Sequence record: PQ066597.1
Reading direction: 5' to 3' (one strand)
DNA: 64,000 nucleotides
Shown: one piece after another, positions 1,901 through 8,658 of the stretch
Layout of the letters: each line of letters opens with the position of its first letter
Numbering within the stretch: the first letter of the stretch is position 1
Translations under genes and position numbers: made by a program
The notes under the pieces: generated by a model
Told to the model about the DNA's origin: nothing
What the model saw: only the letters and a program-made list of their open reading frames with translations
The model's database searches: none

Positions 1901-1993
1901 GCGTGAGTGGCGAAGTTGGTTGAAACGCATCGGACTTAAAATCCGATACTGCATAATGGCACATCGTGGGTTCGATTCCCACCTCACGCACCA
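1901..1993 (+). tRNA. trnL: tRNA-Leu (TAA)
   Basis: GCGTGAG/CTCACGC acceptor, TCGGA-cTTAAAa-TCCGA anticodon arm, long variable arm, TTCGATT T-loop, CCA. Confidence 0.95.
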
Positions 1994-2082
1994 AAATACG
2001 AGATGATAAACTCAAATTCCTTTTTGTTGAATGAGCTTTTTGGACGTTAAACGAGTTTATCATCTCACAAATTCAATATGAG

Positions 2083-2229
2083 ATGCTTAATATGAACGTA
2101 TATATCAGAAATTACATGTGTGGAGTCCTTTGGGGTAGTATCTTCAACGAAGATCACTGTAAAGGTAAATTTGTAAAGATTATGCGTGGTAAACATTTGA
2201 AGCCTTTCTATCAAAAATCGAGATATTAA
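2083..2229 (+). CDS. small hypothetical protein (48 aa)
   Basis: Open frame MLNMNVYIRNY...SRY* abutting next ATG; below ORF-track cutoff. Confidence 0.4.
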   Translation: MLNMNVYIRNYMCGVLWGSIFNEDHCKGKFVKIMRGKHLKPFYQKSRY

Positions 2230-2230
2230 A

Positions 2231-2620
2231 ATGAAAGTGAAGCTTGGGGCCTATAACCTTAATGAAAAAAGTTCATTGGTTAATACGAATGGTGTAAAAT
2301 TCATTTTGAATGAACAAGTTATAGATGAGTTTTCTAAAAAACTACCTATTCTAATCAATTTTGGTCAAAAATGTTTTAACATCGATAATGTCAGAGATAC
2401 ACCAGACCCGGTTGGTATTCTAAATTCCATAGAAACTTACAAGAAAGATAATATCATTATTGTTACTGGTGATATAGAAATAACCAATGACAAAGTGTAT
2501 GATGTTCATGGATGCCTTCCTTCTTTTTGTGTTCGGTCTCTGGCTAATGGTGACGGTGATACTTATAAAGTTATCGAGATCGTTGCGTGGGATATGGAAA
2601 TATATGAAGGTTTATCATGA
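2231..2620 (+). CDS. hypothetical protein, possible degenerate prohead-protease-like fold
   Basis: ORF track; N-x-NG and VRSL-x-NG...V-x-EIVAWD patterns. Confidence 0.6.
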   Translation: MKVKLGAYNLNEKSSLVNTNGVKFILNEQVIDEFSKKLPILINFGQKCFNIDNVRDTPDPVGILNSIETYKKDNIIIVTGDIEITNDKVYDVHGCLPSFCVRSLANGDGDTYKVIEIVAWDMEIYEGLS

Positions 2621-3015
2621 ATAAACATGATATTCATCTCATTGGTATTAGTAAGTTTATAAAGAAAGGTCTTACTGTGGTTCAATCAAGTTTGATCTTC
2701 AAACAAACCAGTGAAGAATGGAAAAATATCCATGATGTTGATGTAGACAAGATTTATTGCTATATTAACAACGAGGGAAAGGATATCTACGCAATTGGTA
2801 GACTAAAATCCTGTTGCGGACCTTGGTTGAGTGTTAGTTGTCGGTCTCTCCGTAAAAAAGGTTATATAGCATTTGACTTTAACGATGAAATTGAGATACC
2901 ATATGGTTCAGGGATGAAAACTGCTTATAGGGTATTGTTTTCTGACACCCCTAAATACGAGTATGATGAAGAAGCTAGACATCCAGTCGCTTACTTCGAA
3001 AAATACTTCAAATAA
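2617..3015 (+). CDS. hypothetical protein
   Basis: ORF track; ATGA overlap with upstream ORF. Confidence 0.7.
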   Translation: MNKHDIHLIGISKFIKKGLTVVQSSLIFKQTSEEWKNIHDVDVDKIYCYINNEGKDIYAIGRLKSCCGPWLSVSCRSLRKKGYIAFDFNDEIEIPYGSGMKTAYRVLFSDTPKYEYDEEARHPVAYFEKYFK

Positions 3016-3059
3016 AAGTTAAACATCCTTTCTAACTGTGATATGATGTTTATATAAAT
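3010..3059 (+). promoter_or_regulatory. tRNA promoter, copy 2 of the 50-bp direct repeat
   Basis: Identical to 1849-1898; immediately upstream of tRNA-Arg. Confidence 0.8.
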
Positions 3060-3060
3060 T

Positions 3061-3137
3061 GCGCTGTTAGCTCAGTTGGATAGAGCAACGTTCTTCTAAA
3101 GCGTGGGTCACTGGTTCGAATCCAGTACGGCGCACCA
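3061..3137 (+). tRNA. trnR: tRNA-Arg (TCT)
   Basis: Cloverleaf, loop CT-TCT-AA, TTCGAAT, CCA. Confidence 0.95.
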
Positions 3138-3221
3138 CGGGATGTGGTGAAATTGGCAGACACACTAGATTTAGGTTCTAGCGCCATAGGCGTGACGGTT
3201 CGAGTCCGTCCATCCCGACCA
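3138..3221 (+). tRNA. trnL: tRNA-Leu (TAG)
   Basis: CGGGATG/CATCCCG acceptor, CTAGA-TTTAGGT-TCTAG, variable arm, CCA. Confidence 0.95.
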
Positions 3222-3222
3222 A

Positions 3223-3298
3223 GCGGGTAAGGTGTTTATGGATACATGCAAGCCTTCCAAGTTTGAGTAGACCGGATCGTTACCGGCTACCCGCTCCA
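3223..3298 (+). tRNA. trnG: tRNA-Gly (TCC), atypical T-loop
   Basis: GCGGGTA/TACCCGC acceptor, loop CT-TCC-AA, T-loop ATCGTTA, CCA. Confidence 0.85.
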
Positions 3299-3309
3299 AG
3301 ATTTAAAAT

Positions 3310-3379
3310 TGATGTGTTACAGCTATCAGCTCACCGTTGAAAGAATACGGATAAGTCGGCTCGACTAAAGAACATATCA
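3310..3379 (+). ncRNA. candidate ~70-nt structured RNA between tRNA-Gly and tRNA-Ile
   Basis: TGATGTGTT/AACATATCA closing stem with two inner hairpins (CCGT/ACGG, AGTCG/CGACT). Confidence 0.45.
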
Positions 3380-3382
3380 TTT

Positions 3383-3459
3383 GGCCCCTTAGCTCAGTAG
3401 GTTAGAGCAGCCGACTCATAATCGGTTGGTCACTGGTTCGAGTCCAGTAGGGGCCACCA
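3383..3459 (+). tRNA. trnI: tRNA-Ile2 (CAT, lysidine type)
   Basis: GGCCCCT/AGGGGCC acceptor and body closely resembling enterobacterial ileX; anticodon CAT; CCA. Confidence 0.85.
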
Positions 3460-3481
3460 AATTTTTGATGAGAGCTATATT

Positions 3482-3676
3482 ATGTCTGGTATAAAATCCA
3501 TAATTGAAAATTGGTCAGTTGGTGATGGTATAATCCACTGGAAAAATGGACGCCATAGTTTAGTAGTCTTTGGGTTTGCTCCAAATGGAGAACCTGCCTT
3601 TAAGTTTAAAGGTAAGAATAAACTTACGTCAGTAAGACAGATTGAAAAATCCATAGTTAATGCATATATTCTATAG
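3482..3676 (+). CDS. hypothetical protein within tRNA cluster
   Basis: ORF track; GATGAG RBS-like sequence upstream. Confidence 0.6.
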   Translation: MSGIKSIIENWSVGDGIIHWKNGRHSLVVFGFAPNGEPAFKFKGKNKLTSVRQIEKSIVNAYIL

Positions 3677-3836
3677 TCGTAAGCTCTCACTAATTTAATG
3701 GTCGTTGACCTTACGATAATAATGAAGCGATACAGAGTCCCATCGCTTCTAAAAATATCAAAAGGGATGTTGATGCGCGTATGTAGCCGGGTTATAATGA
3801 CCAAGATTCATGAAGGGTGAAAGACCACCCTAAATA
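3677..3836 (+). ncRNA. candidate structured RNA
   Basis: Stems TCGTAAG/CTTACGA, GAAGCGAT/ATCGCTTC, AGGGTG/CACCCT; ends at CTAAATA (3830-3836). Confidence 0.35.
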
Positions 3837-3841
3837 TTCAT

Positions 3842-3919
3842 AGCGGGGTGGAGAAGTCAGGAGTTCTCACCAGACTCATTATCTGGAAATCGGTGGTTCA
3901 AATCCACCCCCCGCTTCCA
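3842..3919 (+). tRNA. trnM: tRNA-Met (CAT), initiator-like body with atypical anticodon arm
   Basis: AGCGGGG/CCCCGCT acceptor, CCAGA-CTCATTA-TCTGG, TTCAAAT, CCA. Confidence 0.85.
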
Positions 3920-3920
3920 A

Positions 3921-3997
3921 TGGCGTGTAACTCAGTAGGTTAGAGTGGCGGACTGTTAATCCGTATGTCGTGGGTTCGAATCCCACCTCGCCAGCCA
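3921..3997 (+). tRNA. trnN: tRNA-Asn (GTT)
   Basis: Cloverleaf, loop CT-GTT-AA, CCA. Confidence 0.95.
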
Positions 3998-4003
3998 AAT
4001 TCT

Positions 4004-4094
4004 GGATGTTCGGCTACGATGGCGGTGTAGCGGCGGACTGTAAATCCGTTCCCTCTGGGTAAACAAGTTGGTTCGAATCCAACAACATCCACCA
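4004..4094 (+). tRNA. trnY: tRNA-Tyr (GTA)
   Basis: GGATGTT/AACATCC acceptor, loop CT-GTA-AA, long variable arm, CCA. Confidence 0.95.
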
Positions 4095-4101
4095 AATAGA
4101 A

Positions 4102-4246
4102 GAAGTTAGAAGACGTTCTGATAAAATCCTCGGAGACGATGCCCCCTTGCGGTTTTAAACCGTTACGGATAAGCACGGGGTAATCCAAATCAACCATTAT
4201 AGGGATGTGGTCATCTGGTATGTAAAATACAGTTGATTTGGAACTT
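4102..4246 (+). ncRNA. candidate ~145-nt structured RNA
   Basis: AAGTT/AACTT closure, perfect TCCAAATCAAC/GTTGATTTGGA stem, CCCC/GGGG stem enclosing CGGTTTTAAACCG. Confidence 0.5.
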
Positions 4247-4248
4247 TT

Positions 4249-4324
4249 CGGTGATTAGCGCAGTTGGTAGCGCGTCTGGTTTGGGACCAGAGGGTCACAG
4301 GTTCGAGTCCTGTATCACCGACCA
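4249..4324 (+). tRNA. trnP: tRNA-Pro (TGG)
   Basis: CGGTGAT/ATCACCG acceptor, loop TT-TGG-GA, CCA. Confidence 0.95.
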
Positions 4325-4337
4325 CTTAGCACAAAGA

Positions 4338-4599
4338 ACGGGTAACGACGTATGCCCCGGAATAAGCCAGCCATAGAGAATCTGGATATCCTGAAACGTG
4401 CCTTTAGGTTTCAGGCGGGATTGGTAGTACAAAGACGATATGGTAACTACCCCTTGACAAGCAGGGTTGAACTTGAGGTAACTGTCCTTTACCAAACAAC
4501 GAACAGATGGACAAAATCGGTTGAACGTCCTTCCTCGATATGATAGCATGTCAACCACATTAGGATATAATCACAGTCTAACGATCCTGATTATAATCC
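4338..4599 (+). ncRNA. candidate ~260-nt structured RNA
   Basis: Five or more hairpins: CCTGAAAC/GTTTCAGG, GGTAGT/ACTACC, CCCT/AGGG, GGTTGA/TCAACC, GGATATAATCA/TGATTATAATCC. Confidence 0.45.
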
Positions 4600-4602
4600 G
4601 CT

Positions 4603-4678
4603 GCCGAATTAGCTCATCTGGTAGAGCACAGCCTTTGTAACGCTGGGGTGGTCCGTTCGAGTCGGACATTCGGCACCA
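4603..4678 (+). tRNA. trnT: tRNA-Thr (TGT)
   Basis: GCCGAAT/ATTCGGC acceptor, loop TT-TGT-AA, CCA; C.C mismatch at base of anticodon loop. Confidence 0.9.
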
Positions 4679-4684
4679 AATTTT

Positions 4685-5165
4685 GGATTCTCGTCAATAG
4701 TCCGGTCTATGAGAATCGACGCTTTAAGTAGCCCACCGGTATTTGTAAAAAATCTAGTGAAAGCTAGAAAATAAAAACCGAACCCCGACCTCTCCCATTA
4801 CTCGAATGGTGATGTAGGTTCCTTCCCTGTAATAAGGTTCTAGTCCGTGACGGGTAAAAGGTTACATAGGGAGTATTGCTTGTGAATGACCACTGATTCA
4901 AGCCATCACATAAGCGCGTCCGTTATGACGTTAAATATAAGGCTTAGATTCCCATAAGGGCCTAAGCGTAAAAGTAACGAGCAAGACCGTTTTGCAGGCG
5001 TAGCCCATTGGGGTGATGATGTTTGTATGTTGGGCTCGGATAGCCAATGCTATTAAGTCCGGTGATGGTGCGACCGGATCGATTTACGGAACCACATCAA
5101 CAAGTATGTGCCTTGGTGGTTCGACCTGCTTTGCAGCCGCACATGAAGCTAAAACTTAAAAAGAG
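4685..5165 (+). ncRNA. candidate large ornate ncRNA (~480 nt)
   Basis: No ORF >=60 aa in the track; more than 10 local hairpins, long-range TTTAAGT-AGC/GCT-ACTTAAA and CATCAC/GTGATG helices, pseudoknot. Confidence 0.65.
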
Positions 5166-5302
5166 AGGTTGTATATGTCACCGCTAAACGCAAGCCGTTA
5201 GGACGTAAAGGTAAAAATAGTGTTTTTGTAAATGGTTATACCAATAATGGTATTCCGGTTTTATGTAATGTATTTTATCAGTTTGAAACAAATGGTATTC
5301 CA

Positions 5303-5507: not shown

Positions 5508-5759
5508 ATGGGTAAGACATTTCGTCGTAAAAATGAAAAACATCTGGACAGTTGGTATGGTGATGAACTTAAAGTGAATCGGGATCTGGGAGATAAATAT
5601 CCTAGTTATCCAGAATCGGGTGTCAAAGATCGTTATAATACATTGAGTCGTCAGCGAGATCGTAAATTGAAACATGATATCATGCACGGTAATCACGATG
5701 TTTTTGTTGATGATGATTACGAAATGAAAAAGGCTAACGCCGGTTATCAATATAGTTAA
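5508..5759 (+). CDS. T4-like hypothetical protein (MGKT-x-RRK...YQYS)
   Basis: AAGGA RBS; N- and C-terminal patterns recalled from a T4-type hypothetical family. Confidence 0.7.
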   Translation: MGKTFRRKNEKHLDSWYGDELKVNRDLGDKYPSYPESGVKDRYNTLSRQRDRKLKHDIMHGNHDVFVDDDYEMKKANAGYQYS

Positions 5760-5768
5760 GATTTTAAA

Positions 5769-6010
5769 GTGTACGCGCCCCAAGAGTGGCGCAGCGGCGT
5801 CAAACAATACGAGTCAAGGGTAAAGGTGATACCCTGTATTGTCACTAGACGAAAAGAGACCATATTGCCTCGATTATGGTCCCCGTTTTAAAGAGGGTGG
5901 TGTGACCTACCACTATCACAAGGTTGTTGTCTGACACCAAAGACAACGTTCGGCAACGGGGACTTTATCTTGCTTTGACTGGCTTGATATAGTCCCCGTT
6001 TTTCTTTTTA
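5769..6010 (+). ncRNA. structured element with terminator/antiterminator architecture
   Basis: Multiple hairpins; AACGGGGAC (5956-5964) can pair with GTCCCCGTT at either 5879-5887 or 5993-6001 (the latter followed by a T tract). Confidence 0.6.
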
Positions 6011-6027
6011 TTAACGGAGAATTTGAT

Positions 6028-6213
6028 ATGTTGACTGGAATTTTTATTGTGTATTTGATTGGTGTTCTGGTATTCATTACCGCATTTGGGATTACCGATC
6101 ATCAAGACCGAGAAGAGGATAGGACCCCTACTTTTAAAGAAGTTATGGATTATCTTTCTGTATCAGCAATTTGGCCCGTTTTGATTGCTATGTCGATTAT
6201 TCGTAGTCTTTAA
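6028..6213 (+). CDS. small membrane protein
   Basis: Two hydrophobic segments; GGAGA RBS. Confidence 0.7.
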   Translation: MLTGIFIVYLIGVLVFITAFGITDHQDREEDRTPTFKEVMDYLSVSAIWPVLIAMSIIRSL

Positions 6214-6216
6214 TCC

Positions 6217-6223
6217 CTAAATA
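6217..6223 (+). promoter_or_regulatory. late promoter (CTAAATA)
   Basis: Variant of T4 TATAAATA; recurs before late-type genes at 7770, 8664, 9516, 15113(-), 15843(-). Confidence 0.65.
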
Positions 6224-6252
6224 TGTTCATATCAACTATAGGAGAGTTTTAA

Positions 6253-6462
6253 ATGGCTAAGAATATTCATGAGAAAAGTCATGCCCGTGAGGGTCGTGGT
6301 GGTGCCAATGGTGGTAATGAAAAATGGTATAACTCCAAACTGTGGGAAAACGTAGAAGCCAAACAGGTTAGTCTGGATGCAAAGCCGGATGAACTGTTGA
6401 AAGAGAAAGAAGGTGAAGACCTTCGAGCAAAACAGCGTCGTATGTTCGCGATGGCTTATTAA
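6253..6462 (+). CDS. hypothetical protein (late)
   Basis: ORF track; GGAGAG RBS; late promoter upstream. Confidence 0.75.
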   Translation: MAKNIHEKSHAREGRGGANGGNEKWYNSKLWENVEAKQVSLDAKPDELLKEKEGEDLRAKQRRMFAMAY

Positions 6463-6490
6463 AATAAACTAATAAGAAGGTAAAACAGAT

Positions 6491-7045
6491 ATGATGATAT
6501 CGCCAAACAGTTTCTTTAGAGACGAATATGTTAGTATGGTAAACAAAAAATTAAAATTATTTAAAAGTTCCGAATATCTAGACAGGAGTCGATTGATGAT
6601 ATCTCCTGATGCATTCCAACAAGAGTTGGGGACTATATGCTTGGATATGGGAAGACAAACAGGAAAAACATCTGCTGCTATTATGTTGTTAGAAGAACAT
6701 AAAGACGCTTTGTATGTTGTTCACAACCATCCTACTATCAGATCTATATTGTCGGTGGCACCACATTTAAAAGACCAAGTGTTGTCAATTAGCGACTTTG
6801 TTAATAGGTTTTATTCTCGTGGTACATACAATCATGTTATTCATGGAAGTAGGATTGAAAAATATAGTATGATCATTATTGATGAACCTTATTTCACATG
6901 TACCAATGGTCAGAGACAATTCACTAATCGTAGTAGTTGTTCATATCACTTGGATGGTGGTAAACAAATAAATACCACATACGGTCTAATTAGTTATGCC
7001 GCATTCAGGATGGAATCATTAATCGTTAAATTAGGAATGCAATGA
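6491..7045 (+). CDS. P-loop NTPase-like protein
   Basis: Walker A DMGRQTGKTS; Walker B-like IIIDEP. Confidence 0.65.
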   Translation: MMISPNSFFRDEYVSMVNKKLKLFKSSEYLDRSRLMISPDAFQQELGTICLDMGRQTGKTSAAIMLLEEHKDALYVVHNHPTIRSILSVAPHLKDQVLSISDFVNRFYSRGTYNHVIHGSRIEKYSMIIIDEPYFTCTNGQRQFTNRSSCSYHLDGGKQINTTYGLISYAAFRMESLIVKLGMQ

Positions 7046-7443
7046 AAATAGCTTATAAATATGATATGAAACGAATCTCAGATAGAGTATCTAGATTTGT
7101 GACTCTTGGATTAAAGACGGTTGCAAAGATCCACTATCTCCATCTTACAACCAACAATTATGCGCTCCATATGGCACTTGATGAGTTCTATAAGGAATTC
7201 CCAGATGACTACCTAGATTCGGTTGCAGAGAGCGCCTTGGCTAACGACATCGAGTTGGTATACAACCACTTCGAAGTTGCGTCAGACGACGCTCTGGGTG
7301 TGTTACAGGGGCTTTACGACAACGGCTCTGAGTTGGCTGAGTTACTTGATGGAAAACCAGAGTTCAAAGGAACCCTAAACGCACTTGAGGATTCGTTGGA
7401 ATTCATCAAGTTGGTGATCTACAAGGTAAAACGTTTCAAATAA
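7042..7443 (+). CDS. ferritin/Dps-like helical protein
   Basis: HYLH...YALHMALDEFY...D-x-x-AE pattern. Confidence 0.55.
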   Translation: MKIAYKYDMKRISDRVSRFVTLGLKTVAKIHYLHLTTNNYALHMALDEFYKEFPDDYLDSVAESALANDIELVYNHFEVASDDALGVLQGLYDNGSELAELLDGKPEFKGTLNALEDSLEFIKLVIYKVKRFK

Positions 7444-7459
7444 AAACATCCCCTGTCTA

Positions 7460-7488
7460 TTGACGGGGGATTTTCGTTTGTGTATAGT
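7460..7488 (+). promoter_or_regulatory. sigma70-type promoter overlapping upstream terminator hairpin
   Basis: TTGACG-N17-TATAGT with TGn; hairpin ATCCCC..GTC/GACGGGGGAT. Confidence 0.7.
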
Positions 7489-7806: not shown

Positions 7807-8658
7807 ATGAAAATGAAATTTAGTGAATTCGTTCAATTGGAAGAAAAATTGATGGTATTCGGAAAGAAGGCATATCCTAAGTTTAACAACGTCTTGATCT
7901 TGGCTGGTGGGGCCGGTTCAGGAAAGGGATTTGTTACTTCTAAACTAGTTGGTCTGGAAGGTATTACCCTAGACGTAGACCGTGTAAAAGAGCTTGCTAT
8001 GGCTTCCACAAAGCTCGCTGGACGCATTAAAGCAGAAACCGGGCACGATATATCCAAGTTTGACTTGAAGAAGCCAGAAAACGTTTCTACTCTGCATAGC
8101 CTTCTATCTGATGTATACAAGACAACCAAGAACATGGATAAACGTGTTTTTAATGGTGTATTGGCTGCACCAGAGGATCGTAAACCTAATTTGATCTTTG
8201 ACGTTACCCTTAAAGATATGGGTAAGATGGCTCAAATTGCAAAACAGGTTCGTGAACTAGGTTATAACAAGGAAAACGTTCATATCGTGTGGGTGATGAA
8301 TGATATCAACGTTGCTATGAAACAAAACGCCGAACGTTCCCGTACTGTACCGGTTGAAATTCTTGTTGCAACCCATGAGGGTGCAAGTATGACCTTCAAA
8401 AACCTAATGGCTATGGGTGAAGGTGCCCGGAGTTATGCCGATGGTGATTGGTATATTGCATTCAATAAAATTGGTGTTGACTCTTCTATTGCTAAATCTG
8501 GTAAAGGTGGTTCTTATGTTAAAGAAGCAAACTACATAAGAGTTAAACAACAGGGTAAAGCTCCGATGAAAGCAACTGAACTTGATAAACAGATTGTGAA
8601 TAAGATTTCTGATTATATTCCAAACCCAGAAACATGGGCTATGGTAATGAAGAAATAA
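7807..8658 (+). CDS. P-loop kinase (zeta-toxin/AAA_33-like) with capsid-targeting-like N-terminus
   Basis: Walker A AGGAGSGKG, NLIFDVT, NAERSRTVP lid; N-terminus MKMKFSEFVQLEE. Confidence 0.7.
   Translation: MKMKFSEFVQLEEKLMVFGKKAYPKFNNVLILAGGAGSGKGFVTSKLVGLEGITLDVDRVKELAMASTKLAGRIKAETGHDISKFDLKKPENVSTLHSLLSDVYKTTKNMDKRVFNGVLAAPEDRKPNLIFDVTLKDMGKMAQIAKQVRELGYNKENVHIVWVMNDINVAMKQNAERSRTVPVEILVATHEGASMTFKNLMAMGEGARSYADGDWYIAFNKIGVDSSIAKSGKGGSYVKEANYIRVKQQGKAPMKATELDKQIVNKISDYIPNPETWAMVMKK

What the first reader, a model, noticed from the sequence alone, without database searches (positions are those of the whole stretch)
5769..6010. Riboswitch/attenuator-like switch at the end of the tRNA region
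Seen: the 9-mer GTCCCCGTT occurs twice (5879-5887 and 5993-6001), and both copies are complementary to AACGGGGAC (5956-5964). Pairing with the downstream copy gives a terminator followed by TTTTCTTTTT. Pairing with the upstream copy gives an antiterminator, which is itself competed by the hairpin GACCATA/TATGGTC (5858-5881). Upstream lie further stems (GCGCC/GGCGC; CAATAC/GTATTG enclosing AGGGTA/TACCCT). Inference: a three-state expression platform controlling read-through into the membrane-protein gene at 6028, or a stand-alone ncRNA with a conformational switch. Ligand-sensing leaders are rarely described in lytic phages.
Basis: partly seen in the sequence, partly recalled or inferred. Interest (0 to 1): 0.7.

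Follow-up and report, generated by a model that had tools for sequence, protein, structure and literature searches.

The report
Folded small RNA beside phage tRNAs
The flagged stretch is an unannotated, intricately folded RNA gene of about 245 bases, found only in one subfamily of T4-like Aeromonas phages. Its end hairpin is part of the fold, so it is probably not a riboswitch, and its function is unknown.

Summary
GTCCCCGTT or its complement occurs three times in the window against 0.2 expected.

The interval 5762-6010 is a conserved structured RNA on the + strand. It lies between two small ORFs of a T4-like Aeromonas phage (Emmerichvirinae) and matches no Rfam family. Three diverged lineages keep eight helices through compensatory changes: 12 of 33 tested pairs changed on both sides, 99% of cells paired, 0 of 500 shuffles as good.

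Four loop-to-strand pairings tie the fold together, three of them covarying. One joins the apical loop of the "terminator" hairpin to a bulge 160 nt upstream. That hairpin is therefore a limb of the RNA.

The proposed antiterminator is strong only in the window's lineage (-17.8 kcal/mol). It is weak in phage 65 (-11.3) and absent in Aswh_1/ZPAH1, where the membrane-protein gene is also missing.

Best reading: a stand-alone folded RNA in the genomic slot of T4 RNAC/RNAD, not homologous to them, working as a particle. A lineage-specific cis switch is not excluded (about 0.2). No usable expression data were found.

The parts
5762..6010 (+). Whole RNA element, about 245 nt. The ends are inferred, not mapped.
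   Evidence: It lies between the stop of ORF 5508-5759 and the start of ORF 6028-6213. It is the only part of this neighbourhood that blastn still aligns between the most distant lineages. G-U pairs occur only on the + strand.
5762..5774 (+). Conserved single-stranded 5' flank TTTTAA(A)GTGTA; candidate 5' processing site (inferred).
   Evidence: It is conserved in all three lineages. In lineages B and C its first bases are the end of a mini-ORF, but it is kept in the window, where that ORF is deleted. No promoter-like site lies directly upstream.
5775..5792 (+). P1 hairpin, GCGCC/GGCGC with an 8-nt loop.
   Evidence: It is the MFE hairpin in each lineage folded separately. The stem sequences are wholly different: GGGGTA/TACCCC in phage 65 and GTCCCG/CGGGAC in Aswh_1.
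5793..5797 (+). P2 5' strand, AGCGG. It pairs with CCGTT at 5883-5887 and closes a three-way junction.
   Evidence: MFE in all three lineages. All 5 pairs are kept; G-U becomes A-U in lineage C.
5798..5851 (+). The P3-P4-P4a arm: P3 is CGTC 5798-5801 with GACG 5848-5851; P4 is 5804-5810 with 5836-5842; P4a is 5817-5822 with 5830-5835; the bulge is GAGTCA 5811-5816; the P4a loop is AAGGTGA 5823-5829.
   Evidence: P3 is invariant. P4 has 4 of 7 pairs changed on both sides and P4a has 2 of 5. CC2 has C5832T, which gives G-U.
5852..5857 (+). A-rich junction strand AAAAGA. It is part of the 17-nt invariant block GTCACTAGACGAAAAGA (5841-5857).
   Evidence: Invariant in all lineages.
5858..5881 (+). 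P5 hairpin, GACCATA/TATGGTC, with loop TTGCCTCGAT.
   Evidence: 4 of 7 pairs changed on both sides. CC2 carries the double change C5860T plus G5879A. The same pair of changes was seen in a wastewater contig.
5883..5887 (+). P2 3' strand, CCGTT.
5893..5896 (+). GAGG, pairing with CCTC (5868-5871) in the P5 loop (pseudoknot PK1).
   Evidence: CCTC/GAGG in lineages A and B becomes CCCC/GGGG in C. One pair changed on both sides.
5897..5913 (+). P6 hairpin, GTGGT/ACCAC with loop GTGACCT. Loop bases GACCT (5904-5908) can pair with AGGTT (5921-5925) (PK4).
   Evidence: P6 has 2 of 5 pairs changed on both sides. The loop-strand pair GACCU/AGGUU becomes GACCC/GGGUU in lineage C.
5926..5947 (+). P7 hairpin, GTTGTCT/AGACAAC with loop GACACCAA. 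CACC (5935-5938) can pair with GGTG (5825-5828) in the P4a loop (PK2).
   Evidence: The stem covaries in all lineages. CC2 carries the double change T5928C plus A5945G. Both 4-mers are invariant; 1 of 20000 within-loop shuffles keeps 4 bp in all three lineages.
5955..6000 (+). P8, a long 3' hairpin: AACGGGGAC/GTCCCCGTT, then inner TATC/GATA and GCT/GGC. The apical loop TTGACT (5975-5980) pairs with AGTCAA (5812-5817) (PK3).
   Evidence: About -26 kcal/mol in each lineage. Loop and bulge are complementary over 6 nt in all lineages (AGUCAA/UUGACU, and AGCCGA/UUGGCU in C); 0 of 20000 shuffles match this. It is 45/46 identical between the window and phage 65, against 118/184 for the rest (Fisher p = 8e-7).
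6001..6010 (+). T-run TTTTCTTTTT, the tail of an intrinsic terminator.
   Evidence: Read from the sequence. The tail is strong here. In lineage C the Us pair with As in the stem. In phage 65/avDM6 it is weak (TTTCC, TTTCA).

Best explanation
The stretch 5762-6010 (+) is a gene for a compact, highly structured non-coding RNA of about 245 nt. It is confined to the Emmerichvirinae, a subfamily of T4-like Aeromonas phages.

Shown:
- It has eight helices: P1, a three-way junction made of P2, P3-P4-P4a and P5, then P6, P7 and P8.
- Nearly every loop is tied to another part by base pairing: the P5 loop to the strand after P2, the P6 loop to the strand before P7, the P4a loop to the P7 loop, and the P4 bulge to the apical loop of P8.

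Inferred:
- The RNA is transcribed rightwards together with the upstream small ORFs, and perhaps with the tRNA cluster.
- It is released 5' of P1 at the conserved UUUUAA(A)GUGUA.
- It ends at P8 plus the U-run, which stops part of the polymerases and lets the rest read on into 6028 and beyond.
- The finished RNA acts as a folded particle in trans. It may bind a protein or another RNA, or assemble with copies of itself. It would then be the functional counterpart, not a homologue, of the stable RNAs RNAC and RNAD that T4 encodes in the same genomic slot.

The upstream copy of the 9-mer exists because its last five bases are the 3' strand of P2 and its first three end P5. Its further likeness to the 3' arm of P8 is specific to the window's lineage.
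For: Structure: each of the three lineages, folded alone, gives the same 5' domain as its MFE. On a covariance-model alignment, 99.2% of cells pair, 12 of 33 pairs changed on both sides, 0 of 500 shuffles reach this, and slid controls pair at most 52%. RNAalifold adds covarying P7 and P8. The model was built without lineage C and still finds it at 95 bits, E = 2e-20. Of the 6 differences between the window and CC2, 4 form two compensatory pairs, 1 turns G-C into G-U and 1 is unpaired.

Tertiary pairings: and for PK1.

P8 as part of the RNA: the loop-bulge pairing covaries. P8 is 98% identical between lineages that are 64% identical elsewhere in the RNA, which a plain terminator does not need. 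Its U-tail is weak in phage 65/avDM6, yet the hairpin is kept.

Not a dedicated leader: the downstream membrane ORF is missing in Aswh_1/ZPAH1, and the antiterminator is not conserved.

Genomic slot: the order gene 1, 57A, tRNAs, this RNA, hoc, tk, e matches T4's gene 1, 57A, tRNAs, rnaD, rnaC, e.8 to e. T4 RNAC and RNAD have unknown roles (PMC3014915, PMC9697503).

Further conserved non-coding blocks lie between the last tRNA and this RNA. One of them sits inside the tRNA clusters of unrelated phages.
Against: - No transcript ends or abundance are known. The only public RNA-library contigs are of low depth and may be DNA.
- No own promoter was found.
- Only three diverged lineages exist, so the covariation rests on few independent events, and the alignment was fitted to the model.
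- Two of the four tertiary pairings are weakly supported: PK2 is invariant, so it gives no covariation evidence. PK4 covaries at one pair, but 4 or more pairs arise in about 12% of shuffles.
- In the window's lineage the 14/15 repeat and the -17.8 kcal/mol alternative duplex are more than P2 alone requires.
- The five genes after P8 have no promoter-like site of their own, so read-through of P8 matters and could be regulated.
- No partner or target was identified.
Confidence: 0.55

Rival explanations
1. It is a cis-acting riboswitch or attenuator. The 5' domain senses a ligand, which could be a small molecule, a tRNA or a protein. When P2/P5 are not locked, GUCCCCGUU (5879-5887) pairs with AACGGGGAC (5955-5963), P8 cannot form, and RNA polymerase reads into 6028-7443.
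For: In the window's lineage the alternative duplex has 10 bp and -17.8 kcal/mol. It appears in the MFE of the transcript truncated before the 3' arm. The repeat is 14/15 over 15 nt. A sensor's closing helix sharing a strand with the antiterminator is the usual riboswitch layout (established knowledge). The genes after P8 have no promoter-like site of their own. A globular fold with pseudoknots resembles an aptamer.
Against: The duplex falls to -11.3 kcal/mol in phage 65. In Aswh_1/ZPAH1 there is none at that site, and the best pairing anywhere upstream is -8.6. The gene directly downstream is not conserved, and all neighbours are of unknown function. The P8 apical loop covaries with the sensor-side bulge, so the terminated form is itself a selected fold. 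No known riboswitch class matches in any lineage. The 5' domain is finished 68 nt before the competing strand is made, so termination is the kinetic default (inference).
Confidence: 0.2
2. It is a self-assembling RNA. Some of the loop-loop complementarities (P4 bulge with P8 loop, P4a loop with P7 loop) form between molecules and build a homo-oligomer. This would be a small analogue of the ROOL and GOLLD RNAs that phages encode near tRNA islands.
For: Two loop-loop pairs are kept in all lineages. In ROOL and GOLLD, kissing loops first read as tertiary contacts turned out to be intermolecular, and those RNAs lie near tRNA islands in phages (10.1101/2024.12.08.627333). The genomic context is the same.
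Against: There is no sequence or model match to ROOL or GOLLD. The RNA is two to three times smaller than those RNAs. Nothing here tells intra- from intermolecular pairing.
Confidence: 0.1
3. It is an Hfq-type base-pairing small RNA. It would use one of its invariant single-stranded stretches as a seed against host or phage mRNAs.
For: It has a 3' hairpin with a U-tail and A-rich linkers, and invariant stretches of 11 and 17 nt.
Against: Almost every conserved loop or linker has an internal partner. No complementary site for the 18-nt or 13-nt conserved blocks occurs in the 64-kb window. Eight helices and pseudoknots are unusual for such RNAs. The U-tail is poor in phage 65. The host transcriptome was not searched.
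Confidence: 0.08
4. It is an ordinary intergenic terminator with a structured 3' UTR that only stabilises the upstream mRNA, or a leader-peptide attenuator. The small frame GTG 5902 to TGA 5934 encodes MTYHYHKVVV.
For: The P8 hairpin plus T-run is there. A short frame rich in Tyr and His codons starts in the P6 loop, after GAGG.
Against: Invariant junctions, four long-range pairings and a near-invariant P8 go far beyond what a stabiliser needs. The short frame has 10, 26 or 45 codons in the three lineages, with unrelated sequence after the fourth codon (read). Its codon changes follow the P6 pairing.
Confidence: 0.05

Closest known systems
T4 RNAC and RNAD (species 1 and 2 RNAs, genes rnaC and rnaD)
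   Same: They are small non-coding RNAs on the same strand as a T4-type phage's tRNA cluster, at its far end. They lie between gene 1/57A on one side and the e/tk region on the other. Their role is unknown (PMC3014915, PMC9697503).
   Different: There is no detectable homology: model R1 finds nothing in the T4 region at E up to 10. T4 RNAC ends in a tRNA-like T-arm and acceptor (read). This RNA has none and ends in a hairpin with a U-run. Here one or two small ORFs separate it from the last tRNA.
Riboswitches with an intrinsic-terminator expression platform
   Same: A pseudoknotted, junction-based conserved domain is followed by a hairpin and U-run, then by a co-oriented gene. In the window's lineage, the 3' strand of the closing helix can pair instead with the 5' arm of the terminator.
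   Different: The alternative pairing is not conserved. The terminator loop docks on the 'sensor'. The downstream gene varies. There is no match to any class and no ligand clue.
ROOL and GOLLD, large ornate RNAs of phages and prophages
   Same: They are phage-encoded, lie next to tRNA genes, have many helices and conserved kissing loops, have no known function and no protein partner (10.1101/2024.12.08.627333).
   Different: They have about 580 and over 800 nt, against about 245 here. There is no model match. This RNA is known only from one phage subfamily.
phi29 pRNA (packaging RNA)
   Same: It is a phage RNA of similar size whose function depends on complementary loops (my own knowledge, not tested here).
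   Different: It belongs to a different phage group and sits next to the packaging genes. T4-type packaging needs no RNA. No similarity was tested or seen.

Membership tests
Known riboswitch or other RNA family in Rfam 15 | A match to the family's covariance model | tested here: not met
   There is no match at gathering score in the window. At E up to 10 only chance-level hits appear in the window, phage 65 and Aswh_1, and none recurs across lineages.
Riboswitch with terminator platform | A conserved ligand-binding domain supported by covariation | tested here: inconclusive
   A conserved, covarying globular domain exists. Nothing shows that it binds a ligand.
Riboswitch with terminator platform | Mutually exclusive terminator and antiterminator in the family's members | tested here: not met
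   The alternative duplex is -17.8 kcal/mol in the window and -11.3 in phage 65. In Aswh_1 there is none at the homologous site.
Riboswitch with terminator platform | Consistent association with downstream genes of one pathway | tested here: not met
   The next gene differs between lineages. All neighbours are of unknown function.
T-box leader | The T-box sequence with a conserved UGGN bulge in the antiterminator, and Stem I with a specifier | tested here: not met
   GGGTGGT at 5895-5901 looks like the T-box motif, but it is the 5' strand of P6 and covaries (GGTAGT in phage 65). The Rfam T-box model gives no hit.
T4 RNAC/RNAD | Position at the far end of the tRNA cluster, on the same strand | tested here: met
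   Synteny is shown. One or two small ORFs intervene here.
T4 RNAC/RNAD | Sequence or structure homology | tested here: not met
   Model R1 gives no hit in T4 69000-75000. By eye, only a 7-mer (GCGTCAA) is shared.
T4 RNAC/RNAD | Accumulates as a stable processed RNA in infection | not testable with these tools
   Only low-depth contigs from libraries of uncertain kind were available.
tRNA, tmRNA or tRNA-like RNA | Cloverleaf, or T-arm plus acceptor | tested here: not met
   ARAGORN finds nothing in 5700-6100. The Rfam tRNA and tmRNA models are silent there.
Group I intron | A conserved P7/J8-7 core and an Rfam model match | tested here: not met
   GATATAGTCC (5986-5995) resembles the S element recalled from memory. 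It is absent in lineage C, and the model does not match.
Hfq-dependent sRNA | An intrinsic terminator with a long U-tail | tested here: inconclusive
   The tail is good in the window, moderate in lineage C and poor in phage 65/avDM6.
Hfq-dependent sRNA | A free conserved seed with complementary targets | tested here: inconclusive
   The conserved loops have internal partners. No target lies in the window. The host was not searched.
ROOL/GOLLD | A match to the family model | tested here: not met

The most novel reading that the evidence does not exclude
This is a new class of globular RNA in lytic phages in which the transcription terminator hairpin docks by its apical loop onto the sensing domain. 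The finished fold, and with it the decision to stop or read on into five downstream genes, would depend on a ligand, a tRNA or self-assembly. It would be one of at least three unannotated structured RNAs clustered behind the tRNA genes of these phages.
Probability: 0.15. Interest if true: 0.85.

Novelty: new variant of a known kind. Interest (0 to 1): 0.6.

Why it matters
Complex-folded RNAs are rare, and most known classes turned out to be ribozymes, riboswitches or ribonucleoprotein cores. In 2010 no riboswitch or trans-acting RNA had been functionally characterised in T4-type phages (PMC3014915), and the roles of T4 RNAC and RNAD were still unknown in 2022 (PMC9697503).

This RNA has a clear and testable architecture: eight helices and four long-range pairings. 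It occupies the same genomic slot in a cultivable phage-host system with three natural variants. That makes the old question of what the non-tRNA RNAs of phage tRNA regions do open to experiment. The neighbouring conserved blocks suggest that such RNAs are commoner in phage tRNA clusters than annotation shows.

Tried and rejected
- **Rfam.** I searched at gathering score and at E up to 10, on all three lineages. Nothing relevant appeared.
- **tRNA or tmRNA.** ARAGORN finds none here.
- **T-box.** The GGGTGGT motif is a covarying stem strand, so this is rejected.
- **Group I S-element likeness.** It is not conserved in lineage C, so this is rejected.
- **Homology to T4 rnaC/rnaD.** None was found with model R1.
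- **CsrB-like decoy.** The loops have no GGA motifs (read from the sequence).
- **Coding.** The small frames are not conserved in length or sequence.
- **Trans targets of the invariant blocks.** None lies in the window.
- **More family members.** I ran an exact 16-mer scan and three gapped patterns on IMG/VR, one scan of JGI metagenomes and one of GTDB genomes. I also tried flanking-protein synteny, then scored all fetched loci with model R1. These gave only the known Emmerichvirinae, one phage-65-like metagenome contig (L021) and chance hits. Aeromonas phage 1233 has a homologue of the upstream ORF but no RNA.
- **Public reads.** Only a few low-depth contigs were found, with no ends and no proof of transcription.
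- **Close strains.** The single difference in the 401 bases compared (5700-6100), at 6089, lies outside the RNA.
- **MotA-type or sigma-70 promoter inside P8.** The spacings do not fit (read from the sequence).
- **TTGACTGG at 6031-6038.** The bulge's complementarity to this site at the start of the next ORF is not kept in CC2 or phage 65, so I treat it as chance.

Full report
**Source and setting.** The window is part of a T4-like Aeromonas phage of the subfamily Emmerichvirinae. The stretch 5700-6100 is 100% identical to AS-zj, AS-sw, AP1 and vB_AdhaM_G2, and 98% identical to CC2. Ten tRNA genes lie at 1901-4678 on the + strand. The flagged interval sits between a conserved 83-codon ORF (5508-5759) and a 61-codon hydrophobic ORF (6028-6213), both on the + strand. 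The wider gene order is gene 3, gene 1 (dNMP kinase), 57A, tRNAs, this interval, hoc, tk, e. That matches the T4 region, where gene 1, 57A and the tRNAs are followed by rnaD and rnaC.

**The observation.** Two coordinates are one too high. AACGGGGAC is at 5955-5963, and the second GTCCCCGTT is at 5992-6000. The 9-mer or its complement occurs three times in 64 kb against 0.2 expected. The direct repeat really spans 15 nt with one mismatch, 5875-5889 against 5988-6002. The interval folds far better than shuffles (z = -4.8).

**Relatives.** Blastn finds the interval in 21 phage records, all Emmerichvirinae, in three diverged lineages:
- Lineage A: the window, the AS-zj group and CC2.
- Lineage B: phage 65, 65.2 and avDM6.
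- Lineage C: Aswh_1 and ZPAH1.

Between A and C only 5792-5940 still aligns. The flanking ORF has dropped to 31% amino-acid identity there, so the RNA is the best-kept thing in this neighbourhood. Searches of IMG/VR, JGI metagenomes and GTDB genomes added one phage-65-like contig and otherwise only chance hits. These searches used an exact 16-mer, gapped patterns, flanking proteins, and then model R1 over all fetched loci. As far as these collections show, the family is confined to one phage subfamily.

**Secondary structure.** Folded separately, each lineage gives the same 5' domain as its minimum-energy structure:
- P1 is a hairpin at 5775-5792.
- P2 pairs 5793-5797 with 5883-5887 and closes a three-way junction.
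- One arm of the junction is P3 (5798-5801 with 5848-5851), P4 (5804-5810 with 5836-5842) and P4a (5817-5835).
- The other arm is P5 (5858-5881).
- P6 (5897-5913), P7 (5926-5947) and the long hairpin P8 (5955-6000) follow.

I built a covariance model of P2 to P6 from lineages A and B only. It finds lineage C at 95 bits (E = 2e-20) and finds no second copy in the window. On the resulting alignment, 99.2% of cells pair and 12 of 33 pairs changed on both sides. No shuffle out of 500 reaches this, and sliding the partners drops pairing to 32-52%. RNAalifold shows covarying P7 and P8 as well. P1 has three unrelated stem sequences of the same shape.

The most telling detail comes from the window and CC2. 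They differ at six positions in the RNA. Four of these form two compensatory pairs (5860 with 5879, and 5928 with 5945). One turns G-C into G-U (5832), and one is unpaired (5919). G-U pairs fit only the + strand. The caveats are that there are only four distinct sequences and that the alignment was fitted to the model.

**Long-range pairings.** I listed all unpaired elements and looked for complementarity kept in all three lineages.
- The bulge AGUCAA (5812-5817) and the P8 apical loop UUGACU (5975-5980) match over 6 nt. In lineage C they are AGCCGA and UUGGCU. No within-element shuffle out of 20000 does as well.
- The P4a loop GGUG (5825-5828) and the P7 loop CACC (5935-5938) are invariant; 1 of 20000 shuffles matches.
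- The P5 loop CCUC (5868-5871) and GAGG (5893-5896) become CCCC and GGGG in C.
- The P6 loop GACCU (5904-5908) and AGGUU (5921-5925) become GACCC and GGGUU in C.

The last two are individually weak, since about 12% of shuffles keep 4 bp. But all four partners changed together in lineage C. Nearly every loop thus has a partner, which points to a compact globular fold.

**What this means for the terminator.** P8 is about -26 kcal/mol in every lineage, and in the window it is followed by a good U-run. Three results show it is more than a terminator:
1. Its apical loop covaries with the P4 bulge.
2. It is 45/46 identical between A and B, where the rest of the RNA is 118/184 identical (p = 8e-7).
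3. In lineage B the U-tail is poor, yet the hairpin is kept.

In lineage C the stem sequence is wholly different (19/47 identical), but the shape and the loop-bulge match are kept.

**The switch hypothesis.** In the window, the upstream copy can pair with the 5' arm of P8 over 10 bp at -17.8 kcal/mol. This pairing appears in the MFE of a transcript cut before the 3' arm.

However, only CCGUU of the upstream copy is conserved, and that is the 3' strand of P2. The G-U pair of P2 becomes A-U in lineage C. In phage 65 the alternative duplex is -11.3 kcal/mol. In Aswh_1 there is none at that site, and the best pairing anywhere upstream is -8.6. The membrane ORF at 6028 is absent from lineage C, where a 130-nt spacer with a second hairpin precedes the next conserved gene. 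No riboswitch family matches, and the neighbouring proteins give no ligand clue.

The switch is therefore not the family's conserved function. It is not excluded as a lineage-specific addition. The 14/15 repeat is more than P2 needs. The five genes after P8 also have no promoter-like site of their own, so read-through of P8 matters.

**Best explanation and its limits.** I read this as a stand-alone folded RNA whose 3' hairpin doubles as a leaky terminator. It is probably cut out of a longer rightward transcript at the conserved UUUUAA(A)GUGUA before P1, and it probably acts as a particle.

The structure and its conservation are shown. The ends, the accumulation, the processing and the mode of action are all inferred. 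Public read data did not help: there are a few low-depth contigs, some spanning 5637-5847, from libraries that may contain DNA. A variant of this reading is self-assembly through the loop-loop pairs. ROOL and GOLLD work that way. They lie near tRNA islands in phages, and some kissing loops first read as intramolecular proved to be intermolecular (10.1101/2024.12.08.627333).

**Comparison with known systems.** The closest by position are T4 RNAC and RNAD, whose roles are unknown (PMC3014915, PMC9697503). There is no homology to them, and this RNA lacks the tRNA-like 3' end of RNAC. By layout it resembles a terminator-type riboswitch, but it fails three of the four defining tests. By context it resembles ROOL and GOLLD, but it is far smaller and unmatched. 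I class it as a new variant of a known kind: a phage-encoded structured RNA of unknown function beside tRNA genes.

**Verdict.** Interest is 0.6. This is a well-supported new RNA fold with an unusual docking terminator hairpin, but it has a narrow distribution, no expression data and no function yet.

Noticed in passing
window 4763-5295: About 530 nt without credible ORFs lie between tRNA-Thr (4603-4678) and ORF 5303. The stretch is 89% identical between lineages A and C over 319 nt, and 86-89% between A and B, far better kept than the neighbouring proteins. The block 4935-5085 folds into hairpins with covarying pairs, and one of its hairpins comes in two allelic versions that cut across the lineages (ZPAH1 matches CC2; Aswh_1 matches the window). 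There is no Rfam or tRNA match. This probably holds one or two further unannotated structured RNAs.
   Followed up: partly
window 4770-4868; L036 1501-1593: This block of about 95 nt is also present at 82% identity in Demerecviridae Aeromonas phages (AhSzw-1, Akh-2, AhP_Mru1). A shorter part of about 58 nt is present in Aeromonas phage Ahp1_CNU-2021 and Citrobacter phage Ci1. In AhSzw-1 it sits between tRNA-Glu and tRNA-Ile inside a 16-tRNA cluster, and it is not called as a tRNA. High-depth contigs of other organisms in a wastewater library also hit 4805-4867.
   Followed up: partly
L001 1570-1602; L002 1572-1598; L003 1449-1475; L021 777-803: Lineages B and C have a mini-ORF with its own Shine-Dalgarno sequence, ending 5 to 6 nt before P1. 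It encodes MFREEDWF, MIREEDWF or MYREENEGWF, with synonymous codon changes (Arg as AGA, CGC or CGT), so it is probably translated. It is deleted in the window and CC2, where only its last bases TTTTAA remain.
   Followed up: partly
L004 about 595-675 (CC2); also AP1 and P19: In some close relatives a tRNA-Trp gene and a partial duplicate of the 4941 block are inserted into the conserved non-coding region. The region therefore gains and loses RNA genes.
   Followed up: no
L003 506-577, 881-953, 963-1047, 1057-1130: Four tRNA genes in Aswh_1 are unannotated, and two of them (963-1047 and 1057-1130) are overlapped by the annotated 'hypothetical protein' CDS at 973-1167. The ZPAH1 record lists the same CDS at 973-1167 and no tRNA genes, but its tRNAs were not scanned here.
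   Followed up: no
window 6031-6038: TTGACTGG, the P8 apical loop plus two bases, recurs at codons 2-4 of the next ORF. There it is again complementary to the bulge region 5803-5817 (80% over 15 nt). This is not kept in CC2 or phage 65, so it is probably chance.
   Followed up: partly
window 7807-8658: This 283-codon ORF has a Zeta-toxin/AAA_33-type P-loop kinase domain (E = 2e-7). It is annotated as hypothetical in relatives.
   Followed up: no
window 6028-7443: Five co-oriented genes follow P8, with no sigma-70-like site between P8 and 6028. A clean terminator lies at 7448-7471 and a promoter-like site at 7460-7488. Their expression appears to depend on read-through of P8.
   Followed up: no
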